From: Prasinococcaceae sp. CCMP 1430
Lineage: Eukaryota; Plantae; Prasinodermophyta
Assembly: GCA_013416795.1 (NCBI GenBank)
Contig: RQSC01001105.1
Coordinates: forward strand, 14,046-42,688
Length of the DNA: 28,643 bases
Direction of reading: 5' to 3'
Both the position numbers and the translations under genes were made by a program. Shown piece after piece: positions 2,416 to 23,752 of the stretch; positions within the stretch are counted from its first letter, which is position 1; the number at the start of each line of letters is the position of its first letter. The notes under the pieces are model-generated. The model made no database searches. It saw nothing but the letters and a program-made list of their open reading frames with translations, and was not told where the DNA came from.

Positions 2416-5094
2416 TCATGCCCGCGAGGACGCACCGCCCGAGTCACTCGCGACCGTCTTGAGCTCGCCCATGCTGGCCTCGAGCGCCGCGAGCACCTCG
2501 TTGGCACCGGCCTCTTCATCCTTGGCGCGCGCGACGAGCAGCTTCACGACGTTGCCATGGAAGCCGAGGAGCGCGTCGGTGCGCTCATCACCGAGCTCGG
2601 ACCGCAGGGCCTCGATGGCAACGCCGAGTTTCTTGCCGGGGGCCTGCAGCAGCACGCCCCTGTGCCGCGCGTACAAGAGCTGGACCGCCGTGGCCAGCGC
2701 CGCCGCGGGATCATCCTCGCGCTCGAGCGCTGCGAGCAGCAGCGACTTCTGCGCATGCACCGCCTGCCGCTCCGACTTCTTGTCCATCGCCCTCAGGCCG
2801 AGGCCACACGCCCGGGACGCGGCCTGCAGCGCGTCGAGCAACGCGGCCAGCGACCCATTGCTGGCGTTCAGCGCAGCGACGGCCGCGCCCACATGCTCCG
2901 ACGTGGCCGCGTCCAGGCTTTTGGCGAGCGCCATCGCCATCGCCGCGCGCTCTTTCGGGGAGAGGGCGCCAGCGCCGGCGCGAAGCTCCGAGTGCGCGCC
3001 GTCCTCCGCATGGCCCTGGCCTCCCGACTGAACCGCCTCATCGAGCGTCAGCAGACGCAGGAGGCTGTCGACGGCGTCCGCACCGCACGTGCGCAGCACG
3101 TGCTTGGCGAAGTGGGGGGCCTCTGCCTCGTCTGCCTTGAAGAGCTCCGCCCCGCGTGCGGCGTGCTGCAGCGCCGACCAGCGGCTCCCGACTTCTGCCT
3201 GCAGCGCGGCGCGAGCGCGGCGGCGGCCGTCGGCGCCCGCCGAGAACGCCGACCGAGCGCCCTCGTCGTACGCCTCCCTGGCGGCTTTCACCGACGCCTC
3301 TACCAGCGCCCCTGCGAGCTCCGGCGCGTCGTGCAGGCGGAGCTCCGGCCGCAGCGAGCGCAGACGGGCGAGGAGCGCCGCCGTCGTCAGCGCCTCCGGC
3401 ACCTGTGTGGCCGCCGGCGCCTGCACTCTCGCTGCGGCGCCCTGCGCCTGCTTCTTCCCGCCGGTCGCCCCGCCGCCGCCGCCCCCGCCGGCCTTGCCCT
3501 TCTTCTTGCCCTTGCCCTTCTTGCCAGCCTTGCCGCTCGGCCGCGCATCCCAGTCGTCGTCGGAGCCGGCGTCCCTGGCGGCGCCGGCGGCATGCGGCTT
3601 GGCGCCTGCGCCGGACGCTTCGGGTGTGGCGCCTCCGCCGGCGCTGCCAGCGGCGCCTGCGGCGCCCGCGCCCGCCTGCGCGCGTGTGCCCCGTGCGGCG
3701 GCGCTCTTCAGGCCCTCCTGGCGTGCGTGCTCGACGAGCGCTTCGCGCAGCTCCGCCGCGAGCGCATGAGTGACCACGTACACGCCGGCGTGGGCCGCCC
3801 AGACGTCGGCGTTCCGCGCGGCGAGCGCGCCCACGAGCTGCGCGGCGTCGGCGTCGCCCAGACCCTCGGGCAGGTGCGCGCGCGCGTCCGCCCACCCTGC
3901 CGTGCGCACATCCTCCTCGACACCCGCGTCCAGCCGCGAGAGCACCGCGGCGCCGACGTAGCAGTCGCCGAGCGACACGCCACCCGGGTGGCGCGCGGCC
4001 ATGTACGCCGCGGGGTCCGCCACCTGCAGCGCGCCGAGACGCGAATACTCCATCATGCCGTTGGCCGCGTAGTACGCCTCTGCCGCCTCGCGCTGTGCCA
4101 CGCTGTATACGCGCGGCACCCACGTTGAGCCGCCGCCCTGAGCAACACCTGCCAGGTCCGACACGGCGGCGGAGCCGGCCGAACCAGCCGTGCCTCCTAC
4201 CGTAGCGGCCGCGCTGGCGGCGCTGGCGCCCTGGGCCCTTGCGCGGCTGCCCTTGCCCTTCCCCCCTTTCTTGCTCCCGCCGGCATCCCCCGCTGCGCCG
4301 GACGCGCCGCCCACGCCGCCGCCGGGCGCGCTCGCGGCGGCCGCTGCCATCACCTCGGCGGCGATCGTCCTGAAGAGCACGCCTCCTCCGCCGCCGCTGC
4401 TGCCACCGCCGCCGCGCGCGCCGCCACCGCTGCCACCACCGCCAAAGAGAGCCCCCTCGAGCGTGGCAATGGCGGTTGGCCTGCCCGCAGCGCGCAGCGC
4501 GCCCACCACTTGCGCGCGCAGCGCGGCGACGTGCGTTTCGGTGTAGAGCGCGCCCGCGTCGGCGTCGAGCCGCCCGCGGATGACGCCGCCGAGGTGCGCC
4601 TCCACGACGCGCCGAACGGCGTCTGCCGACAGGTCGAACGCAACCGCGAGGTCCGGCACGGACGCCGCGCCGGATTCGGCGAGCAGCTCGTCGATCTCGG
4701 CGGCCACCGCCGCGTAGTACTCCTCCGTCACCAGGTCTCCATTATACAGCGATACCTCGCCACCCGCGTCCGGGCTCCCCTCGCCCGCGCCGCTGACGAG
4801 CTCGTCGGCGGCGCGCTCGACGTGCGCGAGGTCCACGCCTGCGGCGGCCGCGGCGTCGACGAGCGGCAGCCTCCCGCCGGCGGCCCGCAGCTGTGCGGCC
4901 ACATCGGTACGCAGGCGTGCGCGCGTGAGGTACTCGCGGCCGCTCGCCGTGTGCACCACGGCGTCGCCCAGCAGGCCGCGCGCGCGCAGCAGCTGCACGA
5001 GGTCGACCGCGTTGCGCTCCGACAGCCGCGCCGCCGAACGCGTCTCCTGCGCGGCGCTCAGCGCGCCGAACAGCGACTCGAGCTCCGCATCCAT
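2416..5094 (-). CDS. UFL1: E3 UFM1-protein ligase 1, 892 aa, apparently intronless
   Basis: The N-terminus MDAELESLFGALSAAQ...RLSERNAVDLV...HTASGREYLT is typical of UFL1, as is the acidic/basic loop SDDDW...KKGKGKKK. ATG at 5094, TGA at 2416-2418. Confidence 0.93.
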   Translation of the reverse strand: MDAELESLFGALSAAQETRSAARLSERNAVDLVQLLRARGLLGDAVVHTASGREYLTRARLRTDVAAQLRAAGGRLPLVDAAAAAGVDLAHVERAADELVSGAGEGSPDAGGEVSLYNGDLVTEEYYAAVAAEIDELLAESGAASVPDLAVAFDLSADAVRRVVEAHLGGVIRGRLDADAGALYTETHVAALRAQVVGALRAAGRPTAIATLEGALFGGGGSGGGARGGGGSSGGGGGVLFRTIAAEVMAAAAASAPGGGVGGASGAAGDAGGSKKGGKGKGSRARAQGASAASAAATVGGTAGSAGSAAVSDLAGVAQGGGSTWVPRVYSVAQREAAEAYYAANGMMEYSRLGALQVADPAAYMAARHPGGVSLGDCYVGAAVLSRLDAGVEEDVRTAGWADARAHLPEGLGDADAAQLVGALAARNADVWAAHAGVYVVTHALAAELREALVEHARQEGLKSAAARGTRAQAGAGAAGAAGSAGGGATPEASGAGAKPHAAGAARDAGSDDDWDARPSGKAGKKGKGKKKGKAGGGGGGGATGGKKQAQGAAARVQAPAATQVPEALTTAALLARLRSLRPELRLHDAPELAGALVEASVKAAREAYDEGARSAFSAGADGRRRARAALQAEVGSRWSALQHAARGAELFKADEAEAPHFAKHVLRTCGADAVDSLLRLLTLDEAVQSGGQGHAEDGAHSELRAGAGALSPKERAAMAMALAKSLDAATSEHVGAAVAALNASNGSLAALLDALQAASRACGLGLRAMDKKSERQAVHAQKSLLLAALEREDDPAAALATAVQLLYARHRGVLLQAPGKKLGVAIEALRSELGDERTDALLGFHGNVVKLLVARAKDEEAGANEVLAALEASMGELKTVASDSGGASSRA

Positions 5095-5611
5095 AGCGGC
5101 GGCCGCCGCCGCCGCCCGTCCCCTCCTCTCCCCAACCCCCAATCCACCCTACCCCGTCAGGCGCGTGGGCGCCCGCGCGAGCGCGCTCTGGCACCCCCGC
5201 CCTCGCCATCGACCACGCCGCCGCCGATCTCCCCCTCCTCGACGCCCCGCCCGCCGCCGTCCTCGGCGCTCGCGCGCTCGCTCCTGCGATCTGAACCCTA
5301 TGTAAAATCCTACCCTAAACCCCACGCGGCGTTTGTCGTATCAAAATCAGGGTCAAACGCTCGGCGCGCGGCCGGCCAAAACCCGTCCAAAATCAAAAAT
5401 CATGAGGGCGCGCGAGCGAGCGGCGGGGGCGGGGGTGTTTGCCACACGGCACGCGTGGGGCGGGCGGGCGCCGGGGGTGGGGGTGCAGGCGAGGAGGGGG
5501 CGTGGGCGAAGAGGGGAGGTGGGGGCGTTCGCTGCGGCGCGGACGCGCTCGGTCCCAGCAGCGGTTGCGGTTTCGGCGGTTGCGGTGGCGGCGGCGGCGG
5601 CGGCGCGCGCG

Positions 5612-7863
5612 ATGCTGCCGGTGACGCACGCGCAGGCGCGCATCGCGGCCGCGCCGGGCGCGAGTTATGCGGGGGCGAGCAGCGGTGGGAGAGGGGCGAG
5701 CGGCGGCGGCGGCGGCGTGAGGTACACGTACCGTGAGTACCGGTTCCTGCCGCCGTACCTCCGCCGTGTGATCAAGGTGCGCGTCTCGTCGCGCGCGCGC
5801 GCGGCGGCTGCGCGGGGGGCGCTGCGCGCGACGCGCGCGCGCGCGCGGGCGCGACCGCGCGGCAGCGACGGCCGCGCACGCGTTGTTGTTGTGGTGGACA
5901 GATTTTGTACAGAGGCTCGCATTCTCGCGCGCGGCGTTCACTCCTCGTCGTCATCGCTGCTGCCATGGTCAATCCCCGTGTCTACCTCCATGTCGAGCTC
6001 GACCTCCTGTTCCTTGTCCCAATCCTTCAGCTTCATCGAGCGCGCGTCCAGCGCGTCGTCGTCGAGCACGCGCCAGCCAGTGCTGGCTGGCTCGTCGGCG
6101 GCCGCGGGGAGGCCCGCGCTGCCGTCGGCCGTCTTGGCGTCGGACGCGGAGGACACCTTCTTCAGCTCCGACAGGAAGGACGAGCGGCTCAGTTTGGCGA
6201 CGTCGCGGCGCTTCTCGCCGCGCGCCTCGGCCGCCTCGCGGAGCTCCTGTGCCTTGGCGACGGCGTTGAAGAGGCGAACAACGCCCTTGGTGGCCACGCG
6301 CACCAGCACCTTCTCTTGCGGGCCGGTGCACGACTCGAGCGGGACGTGCCCCAGTGCGCGGCGCTTCTTGCGCGCCGCGCGACCCTCGGCACGCCGCGCG
6401 CTGTCCTGGCGCTCCTCGGCCTCGAGCTGCTGCAAGCGTCGCGTGCCCTTGATCTGCGCTGGTGCCGCCACGCTGGCCGCGCCGTCGCGCTGGCGCTTCT
6501 CCGCAGCGCGACCCATGATGGCATGGAACGCCGCCGCCATGCCCACTTCGCCCGCGGCGGCCGCGCCCTTTCCCTCCGCGTCCTCGCCGTCGCTGTCGCT
6601 GTCGCTGCCCCCGTCGCTCTCGCTCTCGTAGTCATCGCCGCCCTCTTCGTCCAGGCCGCTGTCCAGGCCGTCATCGAGGTCGTCGTCCGCTGCCATCTGG
6701 TCTTCCTCCTCGGAGTCTCCGTCCTCTTCCTCGGATTCCTCCTCGAAGGACTCGCTTCCCTCGTCACGCTCGGACTCGGAGCCGGCCCCGCTCACGCCTT
6801 CGCTCTCGCCTTCGCCGCGGGGCGCGGGCGCGGCGCTCGGCGGCGGCGAGCGTCTCCGCCTGGCGGCAGCGACATCGCGGGCGGGCATCGCGGCGAGCTG
6901 CCCGGCGAGGGGTGGAGGTGGTGCGGGCAGCTCAGGCCGGCGCTACAGAGCAGCGAGTGCTGCCGCGAGCTCCTCGAGCACCGGGCGCCACGCGCGCGTG
7001 CCCCTTGCGCGCGCGCGCGAATGCCGGACCCGCGCCCGCGGCTGCGCATGTGCTTGCGCCCACCCACAACAAGTGGAACCAAATGGACACCGAGTATACG
7101 ATGTGGCAGATGGTCAACCTGTGCGTCGCGCCGAAGGCGGTGTACAAGCAGACGTCCTTCCGCAAACAGACCAAAAACCAGTGGGCGCGCGACGACCCGG
7201 CGTTCGTGGTGATCCTAGCAGCGCTTGTCGCGCTCTCGGCGGTGGCGTACTGCCTCGCGTTCGGGAGGCCGCCGCTGTGGCGCTGGGCGGTGGGGGTGGC
7301 GTGGGCGGTGTTCGTGGATTTCTTGGGAACCGGAGCGGTGCGTCGCGCTCTGCCGCGCCGAGCGCCCTGCCTCGCGCGCCCTCGTTCACCCTCGCCGCTG
7401 GCCCTGGCTGCTGACAGACGCGCCCTCGCTGGCGCGCACGGCGCGCTCCGGCCAGGTGATTGCCACCGTGTGCTGGGGAATCTCGAACGCGTACTTGAGA
7501 CGAGACGGCGGGGCTGGGCACTCGCACGCGGTGGAGCAGCGCGTCGAGTGGATGTACGCCTTCGATGTGCACTGCAACGCATACTTCCCGCTGTTCGTCA
7601 CGCTGTATGTGCTCCAGTTTTTCCTGTCGCCGCTGCTCCTGCAGCACGGCTACCTGGCGGCGATCGCGTCGGACACGCTCTACGCTGGCGCCTTGAGTTA
7701 CTACGCATACGTGACATTTCTGGGCTACAACCAGCTGCCGTTCCTCGAGAGGACCGAACTCTTCCTATGCCCGATATGGCTGGTGCTCGCGGCGCTACCG
7801 CTGTGCATCATAGGCGGCTTCAACGCGACGCGCTTCACGCTCGCGATGGCGTTCGACTACTAG
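5612..7863 (+). CDS. UNC50: UNC-50/GMH1 family Golgi membrane protein; exons 5612-5776, 7074-7337, 7456-7863 (278 aa)
   Basis: Splicing gives ...PPYLRRVIK|WNQMDTEYTMWQMVNLCVAPKAVYKQTSFRKQTKNQWARDDPAF...GA|VIATVCW...VEWMYAFDVHCNAYFP, collinear with plant UNC-50. Donors GTGCGC (5777) and GTGCGT (7338); acceptors AAG (7073) and CAG (7455); both introns are phase 0. Confidence 0.92.
5938..6888 (-). CDS. RRP15: Rrp15 family ribosome biogenesis protein, 316 aa, nested in UNC-50 intron 1
   Basis: Acidic N-terminal region followed by KKRRALGHV...QEKVLVRVATKGVVRLFNAVAKAQ...LSRSSFLSELKK...GWRVLDD...MKLKDWD, the Rrp15 signature. Confidence 0.9.
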   Translation of the reverse strand: MPARDVAAARRRRSPPPSAAPAPRGEGESEGVSGAGSESERDEGSESFEEESEEEDGDSEEEDQMAADDDLDDGLDSGLDEEGGDDYESESDGGSDSDSDGEDAEGKGAAAAGEVGMAAAFHAIMGRAAEKRQRDGAASVAAPAQIKGTRRLQQLEAEERQDSARRAEGRAARKKRRALGHVPLESCTGPQEKVLVRVATKGVVRLFNAVAKAQELREAAEARGEKRRDVAKLSRSSFLSELKKVSSASDAKTADGSAGLPAAADEPASTGWRVLDDDALDARSMKLKDWDKEQEVELDMEVDTGIDHGSSDDDEE

Positions 7864-8369
7864 CTAGCGTGCGCAGGAGCCGGTCGGCCGCCTGGGGTGC
7901 GCCTGCGCGAGCGCGAGCGCGAGTACGCGTCGAGCTCCTGGCGGCCAGCCAGGGCGCCCTTCTATAATGCGTGCCGCAGCGCTCTGTGGATGGAGTGCCG
8001 GTGGGTTAGTCCGGATGCGTGGGCACGCGCGCATGCTCCGCGCAAGATCCCGCAAACGGACGTCCATGCGCTTTTCAGCTGGCTTAGTCACTCCTCGCCG
8101 CAGGCGTTCGCAGTCTCCAGAAGCAGCGCCATCTCGGCCGCCGTGAGCCCCCCCCGCAGCGTGCGTCGCGCCGATGACATCAGCAGCGATCGCAGCCGTC
8201 TCAGCACCGCCGGCCGTTGCCACCTGGCACATGATACAGCCAAGGTGAATGACGGAGCAGTCTCTGTGACGGTCCTAATGAAGATATTTTTTATGCACAG
8301 CAATGGGGTGTGAGTGCAGTGCGCGGCCAGCGACGCACGTGCGCCCGCAAAGGTGTCCCTCTAGAGATT

Positions 8370-9162
8370 CTATAGCGTGTGGTCCGCTGGCTCGTTGTAC
8401 GAGTAGCCCCGCCACACCGCGCGGAACTCGCTCCCCATTGAGCTCAACCTGCGAGCGCCGCAGGGTGGCGCCGGCGAGCACACGCGACGTCAGCAGCATG
8501 CGGGCGAAGCGAGAGGGCGCGCATCTAGTCTTGCGGGGAGAGTGTAGCGATGCGCGGGTTGCGAGGCGCACGTACCTCGCCTTGAGGTTGGGCGCGCGCA
8601 GCGAGGCGTGCGCCAGCGAGAAGCCCAGGCCCATGAAGACGGCCCATGCGAGCGTCGTGAGCGCGTCTGTCGCCCAGAGCGCCAGAGCCGACACGAGGCT
8701 CGCCCCGCCCGCCACGAGCGCGCGATCCACCCCGCAGATGCGCACAGGCTGTCCGCGCCGCCGGCTCGCGCCCGGAGCGGCTGGCGGCGCGTTCCCTCCC
8801 CTCGAGCGCATCTTGGCGGCGAGCGGCGGGCTCACTTTCTTCGCGAGGCGCACGAGGCGCTCGGAGAGCGCCGCCGCGAACGTGTCCACGTAGCAGAGCG
8901 CCGCGATCGCCACCAGGCCGAGCGCCACCAGCGCCCACGGATTCCTCCAGAACATGAACGCGAACGCGAACGCAATGACGGCCGCGTAGTTCGTCCTGTA
9001 GTAGTAGAGGTTGCACTTGAGGCGCGCGACGAGCCTCTCCTTGGTCTTGGGCGCGCCGAACCGCCCGCCGAGGAACTCGCGGAACGGCCGCGGGGGCTCG
9101 GACCACTCGACCTCGCGCAGCGAGTCCGCCACCTCGGACCACTCCACCGCCGACCAGTCCAT
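8370..9162 (-). CDS. PRA1: PRA1 family (prenylated Rab acceptor, PRA1.A-like); exons 9162-8576 and 8448-8370
   Basis: MDWSAVEWSEVADSLREVEWSEPPRPFREF...RLKCNLYYYRTNY...AHASLRAPNLKAR|LSSMGSEFRAVWRGYS. The intron 8575-8449 has GTACGT...GCTGAC...CAG. Confidence 0.9.
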
Positions 9163-9301
9163 CGCGCCGCAGCGGCGCGCCCGCCGCCCGCGCCGTCCCC
9201 CCGCACCGCGCCTGGCAGGTAGCGCCGGGGGCTCGACGGCGCGTGCGGGAGGGGAGGGGAGGGGAGGAAAGGGGAGGAAAGGGGAGGGGGCACGGGGCGC
9301 T

Positions 9302-9368
9302 CGCGCCGTGTGGCGCGCGGCAGCAGCAGCCAGCCCCCCCGCGCGCGCGACGCGCGCCACACGGCGCG
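9302..9368. promoter_or_regulatory. 18-bp perfect inverted repeat in the PRA1 / coiled-coil gene divergent promoter
   Basis: CGCGCCGTGTGGCGCGCG (9302-9319) and CGCGCGCCACACGGCGCG (9351-9368), with a 31-nt spacer. The regulatory role is inferred from position. Confidence 0.55.
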
Positions 9369-9458
9369 CGCGGTCGGCGCGCGCGCTCGCGCCCCCCTTC
9401 CCCCTTCTCCCCGTGCGGCGGCGAGGGCGGGTTGGGGAGGGTGTGGGGGAGGGGGCGG

Positions 9459-10757
9459 ATGCCGTGGGGCGGCGCGGACTCGGACTCCGAATCGAGCGCG
9501 GACTGGTCGGACGGCGACGCGAGCGCCGCGGCGAGCGGCTCGGGCGGCGACGGGGAAGTATCGCAGCACGGAGCGAGCAGCGGCGATGAGTCCGATGACG
9601 ACTTCGACGCGCCTGTGCCGCCGCAGCAGCAGCAGCGGCAGCTGGCGGCAGCCATCGTGGCAGAGCCGACAGACGATGCGAGAGCTGCCTCGGAGGAGCC
9701 CGCCATCGCGGCAGCGCACGGCGGTGACGGCGGCGGGCAGCCGCGGGCGTATTCGCAGGCGCAGCCGACGCTGCCCGCGCAGCAGATTGCGCCGCAGCTC
9801 GAGCGACGACAGAGCCTTCCACAACACCGGGGTGGGACAGCTGTATCGGCAGGGTTGACAGCTTCGCAGCCAGCCTCGGGCGCCGTGCGCGCGCTCATCG
9901 ACGCGAACACAGAGCTGCTGCGCGCGCTCATGGGAGACGAGGCTGACGAGGCCCTGGCCTCGCTGCGGACGGAGGGCGGTGAAACAGAAGAGGAGGGGGC
10001 TGGGCTGCCGTCAGGCGCGTCGGTGGCTGTGCAGTATGCGCCCGGAGTGCACGCACCGACGCAGCAGTACGTCGACGTGACGGCGATGGTGGAGGCCATA
10101 CGGGACCTGAAGCGATCGAACGCAAAGCTCGAGGCAGAACTCGAGGATGCGAGGGACGAAATGGCAGGGCTGCGCGCGGGCCCTGTGGCAGCGATGGATG
10201 CCGCGAATGAACGCGCGGCCGCTAAATACAGAGAGAGGGGCGAGGAATTGGCAGCTGTGCGACAAGCCCTGGCCGTGGAAAGGCACTCGAACGACGAGGC
10301 GGAGTCCGATCGCGCTGCCACGGAGGCCGCTCTTCACAGGGAAATCCTGCGGCTGGAGGCGGCGCTCGAGGACGAGAAGGCCGCGGGGGCGACCGCTGAG
10401 GCCGTCGCCCGCGATGCCCTGCCCGAGCTCGAGGCCGAGCGTGCTGTCAGCCGCGAGCTCTACACGACGATCGTCGCGCAGGCCGCAGACGCGCAAACCC
10501 AGCCAGTCGTGCGCGGGCGTGCCCAGCTGGCGTTGCACGCCGCCGCCAGCTCCGCCACGCCGCCAGCTCTAAGCACTGATGGCAAGCTCGCCGCGCTGCG
10601 CGCGATCGAGACCCGCTTGATGGACATTCGGTCGCGGCGTGCCGAGGTGATCCGCGACTTGAAGGTCGAGCACACCGAGATCGTCGCCACGGAGGAGCGC
10701 GAGGAGAAGCGGCTCTTGCGCAAGCGCGCCGTTCTAATGGAAGCTGCTGCAGGCTAG
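9459..10757 (+). CDS. Hypothetical protein with acidic/disordered N-half and coiled-coil C-half, 432 aa
   Basis: Long ORF with protein-like composition and heptad-rich segments (IRDLKRSNAKLEAELEDARDEMAGL; LRAIETRLMDIRSRR). TGTAA at 10796-10800 downstream. No family recognised. Confidence 0.75.
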   Translation: MPWGGADSDSESSADWSDGDASAAASGSGGDGEVSQHGASSGDESDDDFDAPVPPQQQQRQLAAAIVAEPTDDARAASEEPAIAAAHGGDGGGQPRAYSQAQPTLPAQQIAPQLERRQSLPQHRGGTAVSAGLTASQPASGAVRALIDANTELLRALMGDEADEALASLRTEGGETEEEGAGLPSGASVAVQYAPGVHAPTQQYVDVTAMVEAIRDLKRSNAKLEAELEDARDEMAGLRAGPVAAMDAANERAAAKYRERGEELAAVRQALAVERHSNDEAESDRAATEAALHREILRLEAALEDEKAAGATAEAVARDALPELEAERAVSRELYTTIVAQAADAQTQPVVRGRAQLALHAAASSATPPALSTDGKLAALRAIETRLMDIRSRRAEVIRDLKVEHTEIVATEEREEKRLLRKRAVLMEAAAG

Positions 10758-17399: not shown

Positions 17400-19480
17400 T
17401 CAGAGCAAGCTCGGCGGGCCGCCTTTGCTGCCTGGCGGTCGCGCGTCCCTCGGACCGCCGCGCCCACCGGCGCCTCCGCCGATGCCCTTGAAGAGCTCGG
17501 AGCGCGCCTCTCCATGCATCTTGCCCCGCGAGAGCGCCTGTCGCTCCTGTTGCTGCCGAAGGCCGCTCGTTCCAAACACCGAACCGCTGCCAAGTTGCGA
17601 GCTACCCATTCGAGATGTGCCCCGGACGCTCCCACCACCGGTGCCGCCGCCGCCGCTGCCGCCCGCAGATTCGGCGTGCCACCCAGCCATCAGCGAGGAC
17701 AAGCCACCGCCAACGCCACCGCGCGCGTGCGCGCGCTTGCGCGCGCCCACCGCCGCGGCTTCCTCAGCGCTCGCAACGTCATCCACACCAACACACACGT
17801 AGTCGTCGATGACAGAGCGATCCATCACGGACATGTCCCCCACAAGCCTTCCGAGAGGATCGAGTCCATTGGCGTTGCTCACGGCCATCGCAGCCTCGCT
17901 CGACAGTGGAGGCATCGGAGCTCCGTTGGCCAGGACAGCGGTCGCAAGGGGCGGATAATGGCGCGCACGCTGCGCCATGCCCCGTTGCTGCTGCTGCTGC
18001 CACTCCGATCGAGCTGGTTGCTGATGCTGCACGTCGGGGTATCTATCGACAGGAGCTGGCTGGCCGTGCTGCTGCACGCCCCTGCTGTGCGGTGTCTTCC
18101 CCCGCAGCAGCTCTGTCCCGCGCCCTGCCTGTTGGCGGCCGCCAGCGTCGCTCGCGCCATTTCTGCTGCGAGCGTTTGGCGCCCTATCGGCCAAGTCGGC
18201 ACTCGTAAATGCGGTATCCGCGGTCAAGAACTTGGCGAGCATGTCATCGGCGGCCGCGCTGCCGTACTGCAGGGGAGCGCCGCCACTGTTCAAAGGGTTC
18301 TGCCGATGCTGCTGCCGTTCCTGCCCACCGCGCTCATGGTGGTGCTGCGCGTGCTCTCTGGCGTGGGCTGGCACGACCGCTGAGTAGGCCTGCGCGCCCT
18401 CAACACCCGCCGCGCTGTCCTCCGCCCGGATCCTCGCCGAGCGCGCAGCCTGCTCCTCTGCGAGCTCTTGCTTCCTGCGCGCGCGTGTTGCGTCCCTCTC
18501 CGCTTTCCCCGCCTCGCGCTCTGCCCTGTACTCTTTCTCGAGCTCGTCGAGCTTGGCCTGCGTCAGATCCGCGAGCAGCGCCGCTGTCAGGATCTCGTGC
18601 AGATCGTCCAGCGGCAGCGACGGCAGCCATGAGCGAATGTGCACCACGATCTCCTCGAAGTCATCCATGCGCAGCGCGTGCGCCTCGGTCTCCTCGAGCA
18701 GCTGCAGGCCGAGCTGCATGACCACCAGCATGGAACGCTCCGCCAGCACGATATCCAGAACGCGGCTCGCGAAACGCAGCGGGTACTCAGTCGAGAAGAG
18801 CGTCAGGAACCAGCCGCTCGCGTACAGCACTGGGCCGATGCCAAAGTCGGCGAGATGCGCGGCGAGCCGAGGGCAACGCTCCCGCAGCAGCCTCTCCAGC
18901 TGGAACATGCGAAGCTGCAGCATGTCCATGTCGGGCAGGTAGTATTCGCGGAGGCCCGCCGCGAACATCAGTGAGCACAAAGCGTCGAACACCTCGCTCT
19001 CATGCTCGAGGTACATGAGCAGCATGCCGCCCACGAAGTTCATGCCCTGGCAGTACGCGACGCCGCTGTCGTACACCGAGTACGCGCACAGCACGCGGTA
19101 TAGCGGCGCTCGGCCGGGCCCGCGCTCGCCGCGGAAGAGCGGGTGGGTGGGAAAGGTGCGCGGCACGTCGCGCTCTATAAGCTGGCGCACGCTCTCCTCG
19201 GGAAGCTTGTCGCGCAGGTGGCTGTAGCCTTTGTCGCGCTGCGAGTGCAGCAGCCCGAGCCACATCTGGCGCCGCGTGTCGCGGCTTACCGAGGCGTACA
19301 TCCGCCCGCCACGCACGTGCGCCATGGGCACCTGCACGTCGACGCGGTCGTCTCCCCCGGTGAGCCGCTGATCCGAGGCGCGTCGCCTCTCGGCAATGTC
19401 GTCCGCGATGGCCATCACCTGGCCGCGCATCGCCGCGGCCGCGCCGGCGAGGCCCGAGCCCGCGCGCCGCGCCGCCTTCG
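17400..19480 (-). CDS. TBC-domain Rab GTPase-activating protein (EVI5/GYP-like); 5' end at the N gap, first ATG after the gap at 19430
   Basis: LIERDVPRTFP (Arg finger), AYCQGMNFVGGMLL (Gln finger) and YASGWFLTLFS, followed by a coiled coil and a long low-complexity tail. Confidence 0.9.
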
Positions 19481-19481
19481 N
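19481..19481. other. Single-N scaffold gap
   Basis: n in the sequence; composition changes abruptly across it. Confidence 0.9.
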
Positions 19482-19590
19482 AAGCAGGAGGAGAAAAAGA
19501 AGGCCGCGCAAGCGAAGGTCATTGAGAAGTTCTTAGCGACGACGTCATCCGACGAGCTCTTGAAGCTTGATAATTTGGAGAAGCTGTGGC

Positions 19591-20571: not shown

Positions 20572-21987
20572 TTAGCTGCCGCGTTCGGCGCCCTTGGCCG
20601 CCACGTGGTTTGGGAAGGCGCAGCGCGCGACCTCCTCCCACCGCTCGTTCGGCAGCTGCGCGCCAACGCAGCCCACGGCAGCGGCGCCAGCCGCGCACCC
20701 GGCGCGCGCGGCGGTGGCCGTCATGGTAGCGAGCTCGCCCGCCCCGAGCGTGCCGAGCTCGACAGCGCCTGTACCGCCTGCCAGGAACAGCGCCCAGAGC
20801 AGTGCAGCCGCGTACGAGTCGCCCGCGCCCGTGGTGTCGACTACCCGATCCACGCGAGGCGCGGCAACTCTCTGCGGCTCCGCGCAGCCACGCGAGCGCA
20901 CCAGGGCCCCGTCGGCGCCCAGCGAGCATGAGGCCACCAGCACGCCACAGTCCTCCACGGCGAACGCTAGTGCATCGCGCGCGACGGCACGCTTGGTGGC
21001 GGCGTCCATGCCCCCGCTGCCCCCACGCGACTCGCCCTCGTCCTCAAGCAGCGCGTGCGCCTCGTCCTCATTCATCAGCAGCACGTCCACCGCGCGTGAG
21101 AGCAGCAGGCGTCGGAGCGGTGCCCGCCGCACTCGCACGAGCTCCCACGACGCCAGGTCGAGGCTCACGCGCGCCCCCGCGCGCCTCGCGGCGTCACACG
21201 CCGCCTCGGCGAGGCCTTCCTTCCAGAGCTGATATCCCTCAATTGCGAGCACGAGTGGGCCGGCGCGGTCCTGGCCGCCCTCGCTGCGCGGTGGCATCGC
21301 ACCACCGGCGGCGCTCGCCAGGTCGCCCGCCCGCATCTCCGCGGCCGCCCCAAGGAATGGCCGCATCGTGCGCTGACCGGTGGCGTCAACCACGGCCGTG
21401 CACACGCCAGTGGGCGTCTCCGGCGCGCGCGCGAGCAGTGGCCTGACCCCTGCGGCCGAGAGTGCCGCCGCGTACGCCTCGCCCCGAGCGTCGTTCCCGA
21501 CCTTGCCGACGAACGCCACGGAAGGGGTGGGAGCGTCCTCGCCCCCTCCCGGGCCCGCCGCGCTCGCCCTGACCAGCGCGGCCACCCCACGCGCCACGTT
21601 GGCTGCCGACCCGCCCGGAGTCTCGACGACGGCTGCGCCCGCCGCCTCGGCCGCTTCGAGCAGCGCGTGCGCGGCTTCGCGCGAGACTGGGTGCGAGCCG
21701 CCGGCGTCGGCGTCGGCGATGCCCACCGTGGCCAGTGGCGCGGCGCCGAGCCTCACGACGGCGTCGACCAGCGGGTCGCCCAGGGCGATCAGGGCGGGTG
21801 CGGGCGGCGGCACCGCCATCGTGCTCGCGTCGGTGCCACCGCCGCGGTGTGGCGCGCAGCGGCGGTGGGGCGGCGGCGGCTGCGAGCGCCAAGTGGCGAG
21901 GGTATGTCCAAACCCTCCTGCACGCAGCGCCACACGCGACGCGCGGCGCGGCGCGGCGTTGCGGGACGCAGCGCGGCGCGGCGGCAC
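20572..21987 (-). CDS. PfkB-family sugar/nucleoside kinase (resembles plant plastid nucleoside/inosine kinases); 5' end at the N gap
   Basis: LGDPLVD, PGGSAANVARG, GKVGNDARG, GQRTMRPFLG, SLDLASWELVR, MNEDEA and DTTGAGDSY motifs. Confidence 0.9.
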   Translation of the reverse strand: MPPRRAASRNAAPRRASRVALRAGGFGHTLATWRSQPPPPHRRCAPHRGGGTDASTMAVPPPAPALIALGDPLVDAVVRLGAAPLATVGIADADAGGSHPVSREAAHALLEAAEAAGAAVVETPGGSAANVARGVAALVRASAAGPGGGEDAPTPSVAFVGKVGNDARGEAYAAALSAAGVRPLLARAPETPTGVCTAVVDATGQRTMRPFLGAAAEMRAGDLASAAGGAMPPRSEGGQDRAGPLVLAIEGYQLWKEGLAEAACDAARRAGARVSLDLASWELVRVRRAPLRRLLLSRAVDVLLMNEDEAHALLEDEGESRGGSGGMDAATKRAVARDALAFAVEDCGVLVASCSLGADGALVRSRGCAEPQRVAAPRVDRVVDTTGAGDSYAAALLWALFLAGGTGAVELGTLGAGELATMTATAARAGCAAGAAAVGCVGAQLPNERWEEVARCAFPNHVAAKGAERGS

Positions 21988-21988
21988 N
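21988..21988. other. Single-N scaffold gap
   Basis: n in the sequence, between the divergent PfkB and TMEM161-like genes. Confidence 0.9.
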
Positions 21989-22005
21989 TCGCGCGATCGG
22001 CGCCC

Positions 22006-23388
22006 ATGTTCGGTCTGCTCGACACGGCAATCGCGCTACTCGTCGGCGGGGCGGCGAGCGCGCTCGCGTGTGCCGTTGGCGCGTCACTTGGCAACCGCTG
22101 GGCTTGGGGGCCGCTCTACGCATGCGCGGTGGTGGCGGTCGGTGCATGCCTCACGCTGGGCGCAACGCTCGCCGGCAACGGCAGCGGCGTGCGGCCAGGC
22201 GCCGCCGAGCGCATGGCGGCCGCCGCTCGTGGGACGGTCGCGCTGCCGGCTGCGCTCGCGCTCGCGGCCGCGCCCGAGCGACTGCTCGGCTTCGGCGTCG
22301 AGCGCGCGGCAGCCGCCGCGCCCGTCGCCTTCGAGTGCCTTGCGGCGCGCATGCACGCGCTCGCTGGCGAGGAGAGTGGCGGCGTGGTGGCCGAGGCGCT
22401 CGATGCGGACGCAGCTGCGGAGGCGGCGGCGCCTCTGCGCATGGCGCTGGCGATGTGCGGCGCGCTCGCATGCGGCGTGTGTGTACCGGCAGCCGCGCGC
22501 TGGGCTCGCGCGTACGCGCTCGCTACGCAGCCGCCGCACTGGGCGGACGGCTTCGTGGGCGCGGGCGCCATGGGGCGGACGGCGATGCACGCCGCCTTCG
22601 TTGTTCCCATGCTGGCGGCGCTCGTTTGGGTCGCGCCGGCGGCGAGGGACGTCATCGCCCCGCCGGAGCTCGCACCATACGAAGCTTTTGCCGACGCGCC
22701 GGGGGTGAGTGGCAGCAGCATGCGCGCGCGCGCAGCAACGCGCACATCTCGCGCGTCCTCGCGCGGGTGTGCGCATCCGTCCTGTCGCGCCCCATACCAG
22801 AGGCGCGCTTGCACCTGTCGCATGCACACGCACGTGTCGCGCCCATGCGTTGCACTACTGACCTCCAACTTCGAACCCGGTGGTACATCCTCGCGCTCGG
22901 CTACCCGTTCCCCCCGCCCGCAGCGCCTGAGCGAGTCCGAGTGGGAGCTCCGCCTGCGCCTCGTACGGTGGGTCCAGGCGAGCGCAGCCCTCCTGGCAGC
23001 GCTCGCGCGGCTGTTCGCGGCGCGCCCCGCGCTGCAGGGCTTTCTGGACAGCGCGCTCGTGCGCTGGTACGCCTACCGCCACGGTGGAGATCACAGCGCG
23101 CGCGCGCGCGCGACAGTGCGCCTCGGCTTGGAGCAGGTCAACCTGCTTGCCAACAAGGCCGCGCTTCAATTCGTGGCCCCCGCAGTCATTTCGGTAGGCC
23201 TCGCGGCGCCGCTCGTGCTGTGGGAGCTCGCGCCGCCACGGGTGCACGACGACGCGTGCGCGAACGCAGCGTTCGCACTGGCGATGCCCGCCCTCAGCTT
23301 TGGCACGATGTGGGTGAACCTCTCGTGGGTCGTGAGCGTTCTCGTTGCCCTTTTCGCCACTCGAAGCGGCCTCATGGGCTCATCGTGA
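22006..23388 (+). CDS. TMEM161: TMEM161-like multi-pass membrane protein; exons 22006-22704 and 22924-23388; 5' possibly partial
   Basis: Multiple hydrophobic helices. ARLFAARPALQGFL...NKAALQFVAPAVI resembles the TMEM161 C-terminal half. The intron has GTGAGT...CTGAC...CAG. Confidence 0.7.
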   Translation: MFGLLDTAIALLVGGAASALACAVGASLGNRWAWGPLYACAVVAVGACLTLGATLAGNGSGVRPGAAERMAAAARGTVALPAALALAAAPERLLGFGVERAAAAAPVAFECLAARMHALAGEESGGVVAEALDADAAAEAAAPLRMALAMCGALACGVCVPAAARWARAYALATQPPHWADGFVGAGAMGRTAMHAAFVVPMLAALVWVAPAARDVIAPPELAPYEAFADAPGVSGSSMRARAATRTSRASSRGCAHPSCRAPYQRRACTCRMHTHVSRPCVALLTSNFEPGGTSSRSATRSPRPQRLSESEWELRLRLVRWVQASAALLAALARLFAARPALQGFLDSALVRWYAYRHGGDHSARARATVRLGLEQVNLLANKAALQFVAPAVISVGLAAPLVLWELAPPRVHDDACANAAFALAMPALSFGTMWVNLSWVVSVLVALFATRSGLMGSS

Positions 23389-23752
23389 GAGGTCGGCAGG
23401 GGTCTGGAGTTGCGCGGGCGTGTGCCGACGCGCATCTCCGCATGTGCTGGCCGTCGTGCTGCATCATCAAAAGATTGCGTTGCGTGGAGGAAGGAAATTG
23501 CAAGCGATCGTAATCTATAGTACTGTACTGTACTAGCCACCTGCTGGGCGGCCCTAGGAGAGGCTGCCGCCGGCCACCGCGCGGACTCGTGTGGCACCTG
23601 CTGCGCCCCCCGCCCCCCCTACCCCTCCCCTCTCCTCCCCCTTCCTGCGGACACGCGGCAGCTGCGCGTGCTCCGGCGCGCAAACACTCCCCCCACCGCT
23701 CCAGGCCGGCTGTGGTGCAGAATTGGGGTGCGGGAGCTTTTTGGCAGGGTTA

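What the first reader, a model, noticed from the sequence alone, without database searches (positions are those of the whole stretch)
5612..7863. Complete RRP15 gene nested antisense inside intron 1 of UNC-50
Seen: MLPVTH...PPYLRRVIK (5612-5776) ends at a GTGCGC donor and the protein resumes 1297 nt later at WNQMDTEY (7074). This rebuilds the conserved LRRIIK-WQQMD junction of plant UNC-50. The whole RRP15 ORF (5938-6888, minus strand) lies in that intron, with about 160 nt for its 3' UTR and about 185 nt upstream before exon 2. The other introns I could define are only 117-219 nt. Inference: RRP15 was inserted or relocated into the intron, and two housekeeping genes are forced into antisense co-transcription. 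Gene predictors would probably miss exon 1.
Basis: partly seen in the sequence, partly recalled or inferred. Interest (0 to 1): 0.75.

Follow-up and report, generated by a model that had tools for sequence, protein, structure and literature searches.

The report
RRP15 gene nested in UNC-50 intron
In the marine green picoalga Prasinoderma coloniale, the ribosome-assembly gene RRP15 really does lie backwards inside the first intron of the Golgi-trafficking gene UNC-50, but this is an ordinary nested gene and the three-exon UNC-50 model is already public.

Summary
UNC-50 has three exons: 5612-5776, 7074-7337 and 7456-7863. Intron 1 (5777-7073, 1297 nt, GTGCGC...AAG) contains the whole single-exon RRP15 reading frame (5938-6888, minus strand).

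Each exon, searched separately, is identical to residues 1-55, 56-143 and 144-278 of a public 278-aa Prasinoderma coloniale protein (UniRef100_A0A7R9XYA5; gene model PRCOL_00006227-RA).

The RRP15 ORF is 100% identical to a protein that is also in the MMETSP transcriptome set.

Micromonas-like metagenome contigs have an intron at the same phase-0 site (...RRLMK | FRQMD), but it is only 117-120 nt and holds no gene. No RRP15 lies within 10 kb of UNC-50 in any of the 43 related loci. A closer relative (71% identical) shows spliced and unspliced forms that part exactly at this site. The intron is therefore old, and the gene inside it looks like a lineage-specific arrival.

Antisense co-transcription is inferred, not shown.

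Nested intronic genes are well known. This is a tidy example in a compact genome (mean intron 225 nt) and of low interest.

The parts
5612..5776 (+). UNC-50 exon 1 (55 codons, MLPVTH...FLPPYLRRVIK)
   Evidence: 100% identical to residues 1-55 of public protein P0188. BLASTP to Chlorokybus UNC-50 P0028 gives E 8e-08, ending at ...RRIVK. It is the unique best tblastn site for homologue N-termini in the window. GC3 is 0.89. Y49, R51 and R52 are invariant in alignment A1.
5777..7073 (+). UNC-50 intron 1, 1297 nt, phase 0, GTGCGC...AAG; host of RRP15
   Evidence: Read directly from the sequence. The junction is fixed by P0188 residues 55/56. The same site carries a 117-120 nt intron in loci L004, L005, L008, L010 and L011.
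5938..6888 (-). RRP15 coding sequence, single exon, 316 aa plus stop
   Evidence: Pfam Rrp15p PF07890 at 56 bits, full profile 1-140. 100% identical to P0215, which is also held in MMETSP, UniRef and EukProt. Plant and algal RRP15-like proteins are the next relatives. GC3 is 0.87.
5777..5937 (-). 161 nt between the RRP15 stop and UNC-50 exon 1; presumed RRP15 3' UTR and poly(A) region
   Evidence: Inference only. The one AT-richer patch (minus strand CTGTACAAAATCTGTCCACCACAACAACAAC, about 5883-5913) lies 25-55 nt past the stop. No transcript-end data.
6889..7073 (-). 185 nt between the RRP15 ATG and the UNC-50 exon 2 acceptor; presumed RRP15 5' UTR and promoter, also the 3' end of the host intron
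   Evidence: Inference from position. It holds no in-frame ATG for UNC-50 upstream of M7083.
7074..7337 (+). UNC-50 exon 2 (88 codons, WNQMDTEY...)
   Evidence: Pfam UNC-50 E 9e-32, profile 8-93. 100% identical to P0188 residues 56-143.
7338..7455 (+). UNC-50 intron 2, 118 nt, GTGCGT...CAG
   Evidence: Sequence. Junction fixed by P0188 residues 143/144.
7456..7863 (+). UNC-50 exon 3 (135 codons plus TAG)
   Evidence: Pfam UNC-50 E 5e-44, profile 95-220. Identical to P0188 residues 144-278; the single M/V difference is the tool reading the first GTG as a start codon.
5095..5611 (.). 517-nt divergent region between the first ATG of UFL1 (minus strand) and the UNC-50 ATG; presumed UNC-50 promoter
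   Evidence: UFL1 is identified by Pfam E3_UFM1_ligase, UFL1 and UFL1_C. The promoter role is inferred.

Best explanation
This is a true host/nested gene pair in nuclear DNA of Prasinoderma coloniale. UNC-50, a Golgi membrane protein of the UNC-50/GMH1 family, is transcribed on the + strand from the region it shares divergently with UFL1. Its pre-mRNA runs antisense through the entire RRP15 gene. A 1297-nt phase-0 intron (GTGCGC...AAG) is then spliced out, joining ...YLRRVIK to WNQMD..., and a 118-nt second intron follows. RRP15, a pre-60S ribosome-assembly factor, is an independent single-exon gene on the minus strand. Its start signals must lie in the last 185 nt of the host intron (or reach into exon 2), and its end signals in the first 161 nt. 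The intron site is old: it is shared with a chlorophyte lineage, where the intron is about 120 nt. So RRP15 most likely moved into a short pre-existing intron in the Prasinoderma lineage, and it now makes up 73% of that intron. Shown: both reading frames, the splice junctions at protein level, the identity of both products with public proteins, and the conserved intron site. Inferred: promoters, transcript ends, simultaneous transcription and any interference, and the direction and mechanism of the relocation.
For: Pfam family assignments for exon 2, exon 3 and the nested ORF. Exons 1, 2 and 3, compared one at a time, equal residues 1-55, 56-143 and 144-278 of P0188, a 278-aa UNC-50 family protein of P. 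coloniale (UniRef100_A0A7R9XYA5; EukProt PRCOL_00006227-RA). Exon 1 aligns to homologue N-termini (MLP..., YRxYxFLPxYxRRxxK) and ends exactly where they continue with WRQMD. RRP15 equals P0215, which is present in MMETSP. The genome paper reports that 6,996 of 7,139 gene models are transcript-supported, that PASA transcripts were used for annotation, and that the mean intron is 225 nt. The same intron site occurs in Micromonas-like loci at 117-120 nt with GTGAGA/GTGCGA...CAG. In the 71%-identical relative, P0198 (spliced form) and P0002 (genomic ORF) are 98% identical from W onward and unrelated before it. An RRP15 profile built from 66 homologues hits only the window's ORF (E 1e-69) among the 43 loci.
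Against: No RNA reads or transcript contigs could be examined here, so the splice is supported at protein and annotation level only. P0188 could in principle be a homology-guided prediction. The acceptor is AAG, whereas intron 2 and the Micromonas-like introns use CAG, and I saw no clear branch-point motif. At 1297 nt the intron is about six times the genome mean. No target-site duplication or poly(A) remnant marks an insertion. Nesting could not be checked in the nearest relative, so the timing and direction of the relocation rest on distant comparisons.
Confidence: 0.9

Rival explanations
1. The two genes are simply head to head. UNC-50 transcription starts in the 185 nt after RRP15, translation starts at M7083 (WNQ-M-DTEY), and 5612-5776 is a relic or a rarely used alternative first exon.
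For: RRP15 and exon 2 are arranged like a typical compact bidirectional pair 185 nt apart. An in-frame ATG exists at 7083. No RNA evidence was seen here.
Against: Exon 1 is an intact ORF with GC3 of 0.89. It carries the invariant Y..RR motif and the MLP start of the family. It is kept in the 71% relative (P0198: ARYTYRELRFLPPYLRRVVK) and is part of the public 278-aa protein. A start at M7083 would drop Pfam profile positions 1-10 or so.
Confidence: 0.04
2. An assembly artefact (a mis-join or collapsed insertion) placed RRP15 between exon 1 and exon 2. In the real chromosome the intron is short.
For: A follow-up note of this scan reports a mis-joined 3.6-kb 'intron' elsewhere in this genome's assembly (s1-405969; I did not check it). 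(CG)n tracts lie at both ends of the intron and could mislead an assembler.
Against: RRP15 sits with plausible 161-nt and 185-nt flanks, and the sequence is continuous through both boundaries. The published annotation spans it. Other assemblies carry the 99%-identical RRP15 on contigs up to 8.7 kb, though their flanks could not be read.
Confidence: 0.03
3. The nest is ancestral rather than a derived insertion. RRP15 already lay in this UNC-50 intron early in green-lineage history and was lost from it in chlorophytes, leaving the short intron.
For: The intron site itself is old. P. coloniale branches before the chlorophyte/streptophyte split (PMC7455551, abstract), so polarity cannot be read from chlorophytes alone.
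Against: None of the 43 loci from varied algae and other eukaryotes has RRP15 near UNC-50. Many of them have no intron at the site. Reviews of nested genes report gain by insertion as the usual route (PMC5174743 abstract).
Confidence: 0.1

Closest known systems
Public P. coloniale gene model PRCOL_00006227-RA / UniRef100_A0A7R9XYA5 (UNC-50 family protein, 278 aa)
   Same: Identical to the three exons found here, residue for residue. The window is this locus.
   Different: Nothing in the sequence differs. The genome paper does not mention nested genes, so the nesting is implicit in the annotation and not described.
Nested (intronic) protein-coding genes of animals, e.g. Drosophila melanogaster, where nearly 10% of genes are in nested structures (PMC3814207; PMC5174743)
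   Same: One complete gene lies within one intron of another and has its own signals. Antisense orientation is common for such pairs (my own knowledge).
   Different: The usual pattern is a short, young duplicate inserted into an already long intron (PMC5174743 abstract). Here the nested gene is a conserved housekeeping gene. The intron is long only because of it (951 of 1297 nt), in a genome whose mean intron is 225 nt, and the same intron is about 120 nt in another alga.
Nested genes in the dinoflagellate alga Amphidinium carterae (25% of genes nested; PMC12584245)
   Same: Genes lie embedded in introns of host genes in an alga, and nested and host genes are expressed independently.
   Different: That genome is 1.25 Gb with very long introns. 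P. coloniale is 25 Mb and compact.
UNC-50 / GMH1 family (Pfam PF05216) and RRP15 (Pfam PF07890)
   Same: Both products are ordinary full-length members of their families. The closest named relatives are green algae and land plants.
   Different: Neither protein shows anything unusual. Only their genomic arrangement is of note.

Membership tests
UNC-50 family (PF05216) | Match to the Pfam profile above the gathering score | tested here: met
   Exon 2 scores 110.8 bits and exon 3 scores 150.9 bits against a cut-off of 22.1.
UNC-50 family (PF05216) | Coverage of the whole profile, including the N-terminal Y-x-R-R motif just before [WF]RQMD | tested here: met
   Exons 2 and 3 cover profile positions 8-220. 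Exon 1 ends with YLRRVIK, and Y49, R51 and R52 are invariant among 15 sequences. That these 7 residues fill profile positions 1-7 is inferred, because the joined protein was not scanned.
Rrp15p family (PF07890) | Match to the Pfam profile above the gathering score, over the full profile length | tested here: met
   56 bits against a cut-off of 27, profile 1-140 of 140, residues 117-243. 66 homologues all carry PF07890.
Nested (intronic) gene pair | The whole coding sequence of one gene lies inside a single intron of another | tested here: met
   RRP15 5938-6888 lies inside intron 5777-7073.
Nested (intronic) gene pair | The host intron is really spliced | tested here: met
   At protein level: public protein P0188 equals exon 1 + exon 2 + exon 3. 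The orthologous site shows spliced and unspliced forms in a relative. No reads were inspected.
Nested (intronic) gene pair | Both genes are expressed as separate transcripts, and the nested transcript ends within the intron | not testable with these tools
   The exact RRP15 protein is in the MMETSP transcriptome set, which suggests expression. Transcript ends are unknown.

The most novel reading that the evidence does not exclude
The UNC-50/RRP15 nest may be one of many in P. coloniale. First readers of this scan flagged several other housekeeping genes lying antisense in unusually long introns of the same genome (PNO1, RPB11, one in a BASS intron, one at RPL27A), all unchecked. If the nests are numerous and conserved in other Prasinodermophyta, gene capture by short introns would be a genome-wide trait of this compact, early-branching green lineage. 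It would also give a natural system for studying antisense interference between essential genes.
Probability: 0.15. Interest if true: 0.45.

Novelty: new member of a known kind. Interest (0 to 1): 0.2.

Why it matters
It matters little on its own. It explains why one intron is six times the genome's mean length. It shows that a conserved, short phase-0 intron can take in a whole essential gene in a compact picoalgal genome. It also offers a clean pair (Golgi trafficking host, ribosome-assembly guest, both constitutive) for asking whether antisense read-through affects expression. For the scan, exon 1 is not a missed exon, because the public annotation already has it.

Tried and rejected
The contigs carrying the close relatives (P0197/P0002 for UNC-50, P0227/P0123 for RRP15) and the independent P. 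coloniale-like contigs could not be read, so synteny in the nearest relative and independent confirmation of the assembly remain open.
2. The one metagenome scan returned no locus closer than 64%.
3. Scans of viral contigs and genome contigs with the relative's UNC-50 and RRP15 found nothing.
4. tblastn and a 66-sequence RRP15 profile found no RRP15 near UNC-50 in any locus.
5. Insertion scars: no target-site duplication and no poly(A) remnant, only (CG)n-rich low-complexity repeats at both intron ends.
6. I tested whether the intron ends pair to loop out RRP15. The duplex of the first 90 nt with the last 110 nt is -124.8 kcal/mol, but 8.9% of GC-matched windows pair as well, so this is not significant. 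The MFE fold of the whole intron pairs 23-90 with 1183-1271 (61 pairs; 25 control segments reach at most 46). That is weak and I do not rely on it.
7. Rfam and tRNA scans of the window gave nothing, so there is no intronic snoRNA.
8. P0122 (84% RRP15 on a 29.5-kb contig) looked like a second relative. It is the same protein with an out-of-frame stretch.
9. The spliced UNC-50 model was searched exon by exon, by reference.
10. The large representative search, structure prediction and the third word search were not needed.
11. The DNA is algal, not human.

Full report
**What is there**

The window is GC-rich nuclear DNA, 62-77% GC per kb. On the + strand an ATG at 5612 opens 55 codons (MLPVTH...FLPPYLRRVIK) that end at 5776, directly before GTGCGC. 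The frame resumes at 7074 (WNQMDTEY...) directly after AAG.

A second, 118-nt intron (7338-7455, GTGCGT...CAG) separates exon 2 (7074-7337) from exon 3 (7456-7863, TAG). Intron 1 is 5777-7073, exactly 1297 nt, phase 0.

Inside it, on the minus strand, is one uninterrupted ORF, 5938-6888 (316 aa, ATG start). It leaves 161 nt to the donor and 185 nt to the acceptor.

**Identity of the two genes**

- Pfam places exon 2 (E 9e-32, profile positions 8-93) and exon 3 (E 5e-44, positions 95-220) in the UNC-50 family.
- Pfam places the nested ORF in Rrp15p (56 bits against a cut-off of 27, whole profile 1-140).
- The closest named UNC-50 relatives are green algae and land plants at 51-65% identity.
- RRP15-like proteins of plants and algae are the next relatives of the nested ORF.

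**Is exon 1 real?**

Exon 1 is too short to hit Pfam on its own, so I compared it by reference with full-length homologues.

- In a 15-sequence alignment it shares the MLP start and the block Y-R-x-Y-x-F-L-P-x-Y-x-R-R-x-x-K. Y49, R51 and R52 are invariant. It stops exactly where the others continue with WRQMD.
- BLASTP to the Chlorokybus protein gives E 8e-08.
- The N-terminal pieces of 14 homologues were run by tblastn against all six frames of the window. Nine gave their best hit at the same place, each hit ending at 5776. The other hits were low-complexity noise, and nothing lies in 6889-7073.
- Its GC3 is 0.89, like coding sequence; the published values are 85.7% for CDS and 73.5% for introns (PMC11884799).

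**The decisive result**

A cluster look-up showed that the 90% cluster of the exon-3 hit contains P0188. This is a 278-aa 'UNC-50 family protein' of Prasinoderma coloniale, listed as UniRef100_A0A7R9XYA5 and as EukProt PRCOL_00006227-RA.

I compared it exon by exon:
- Exon 1 equals residues 1-55.
- Exon 2 equals residues 56-143.
- Exon 3 equals residues 144-278.

The only mismatch is the tool reading the first GTG of exon 3 as Met.

The RRP15 ORF is 100% identical to P0215, which is held in MMETSP, UniRef and EukProt among other sources. The window is therefore the P. coloniale locus itself, and both gene models are already public.

The genome paper reports 69.8% GC and 7,139 genes, of which 6,996 are transcript-supported. 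Annotation used PASA, Augustus and GeneMark with assembled transcripts. There are 2.2 exons per gene and the mean intron is 225 nt (PMC7455551). It does not discuss nested genes.

**Age of the intron and origin of the nest**

The single metagenome scan gave 43 UNC-50 loci.

- In five GC-rich picoalgal contigs (L004, L005, L008, L010, L011; 53-55% identical; I take them for Micromonas-like, which is an inference), exon 1 ends ...Y[VI]RRLMK. It is followed by a 117-120-nt intron (GTGAGA or GTGCGA ... CAG) and then by FRQMD. This is the same phase-0 site.
- Other algal loci read straight through the site with no intron.
- An Arabidopsis variant model (P0104) departs from the Capsella protein exactly after FRRIVK, which suggests an exon boundary there too.
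- In the nearest relative, whose cluster is 71% identical in exon 3, two forms coexist. P0198 reads ...FLPPYLRRVVK-WRQMD. P0002 has unrelated residues up to ...LLQ-WRQMD. From W onward they are 98% identical. This is what a spliced message and an ORF called on genomic DNA would look like.

So the intron site is old.

RRP15 is absent from all 43 loci, nine of which extend 5-10 kb to each side. This holds both by tblastn and with a profile built from 66 homologues, which scores the window's own ORF at E 1e-69.

The simplest reading is that a short ancestral intron took in RRP15 in the Prasinoderma lineage. The gene now makes up 951 of the 1297 nt.

I found no target-site duplication or poly(A) trace, so the mechanism is unknown. 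An ancestral nest that was lost elsewhere is not excluded.

**How it most likely works**

Shown:
- Two intact genes on opposite strands, one inside the other's intron.
- Splice junctions consistent with the public protein.

Inferred:
- UNC-50 is transcribed from the 517-nt region it shares divergently with UFL1 (first ATG at 5094, minus strand; Pfam hits). Polymerase reads antisense through RRP15, and the 1297-nt intron is removed.
- RRP15 starts from signals within the last 185 nt of the intron, or reaching into exon 2.
- RRP15 probably ends near the only AT-richer patch, 25-55 nt past its stop.

Whether the two transcripts overlap, and whether they interfere, cannot be said. Work on Drosophila and mammals reports interference for nested pairs, with differing consequences (PMC5174743, PMC8467205; abstracts only).

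**Rivals**

- A head-to-head pair with UNC-50 starting at M7083 is contradicted by the conserved, coding-like exon 1 and by the public protein.
The published annotation spans the site, and the flanks look like ordinary gene ends.

**Things that led nowhere**

- Scans of viral contigs and genome contigs for relatives found nothing.
- Pairing between the two ends of the intron is not significant against GC-matched controls.
- Rfam and tRNA scans of the window gave nothing.
- P0122, apparently an 84% relative on a 29.5-kb contig, is the same RRP15 with a frameshifted stretch.

**Comparison with what is known, and verdict**

[quoted passage not shown] Nearly 10% of Drosophila genes are in such structures (PMC3814207). 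A quarter of the genes of the dinoflagellate Amphidinium are nested (PMC12584245).

This case differs only in degree. The host intron is short in other algae, the genome is compact, and the guest is an old housekeeping gene, not a young duplicate.

It is a new, undescribed example of a known kind, already implicit in the public annotation, and I score its interest low. Other first-reader notes on this genome mention further antisense genes in long introns. They are unchecked, but a genome-wide count from the public GFF would be the sensible follow-up.

Noticed in passing
window 2416-5142 (-): A UFL1 (E3 UFM1-protein ligase 1) gene with all three Pfam domains and a long Gly/Ala-rich insert. Its first ATG, at 5094, lies 517 nt from the UNC-50 ATG in divergent orientation.
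   Followed up: partly
window 8278-9822 (-), PRA1 domain about 8578-9105: A PRA1 (prenylated Rab acceptor) family gene is convergent with UNC-50, about 410 nt between their stops. With the RabGAP-TBC gene at 17400-19511 (-), three membrane-traffic genes lie within 14 kb. This may well be chance.
   Followed up: no
window 5790-5852 and 6985-7035: (CG)n-rich tracts lie just inside both ends of intron 1. An MFE fold of the intron pairs 23-90 with 1183-1271, which would loop out the RRP15 antisense region. Against GC-matched controls the pairing energy is not significant (8.9%).
   Followed up: yes
L004 9521-9640; L005 155-271; L008 9485-9601; L010 7473-7589; L011 1069-1185: Micromonas-like metagenome contigs carry a 117-120-nt intron at exactly the UNC-50 K|[WF]RQMD site. 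Ostreococcus-like and other algal contigs have none.
   Followed up: yes
protein P0122 (ENA contig of 29,504 nt): This protein is listed as 84% identical to RRP15 but is the same protein with an out-of-frame stretch of about 36 residues. It probably comes from a noisy assembly of P. coloniale-like DNA and not from a separate species.
   Followed up: partly
protein P0215, contig length 1381 nt: The only contig on record for the exact RRP15 protein is 1381 nt, longer than the 1297-nt host intron. If it is a transcript, the RRP15 mRNA overlaps a UNC-50 exon in antisense, or an unstranded assembly merged the two.
   Followed up: no
window 9243-10757 (+) and 21735-23513 (+): These long ORFs (504 and 592 aa) have no Pfam match. 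The first is Glu/Ala-rich and coiled-coil-like in its C-terminal half. Whether either is a true gene was not checked in this GC-rich DNA.
   Followed up: no
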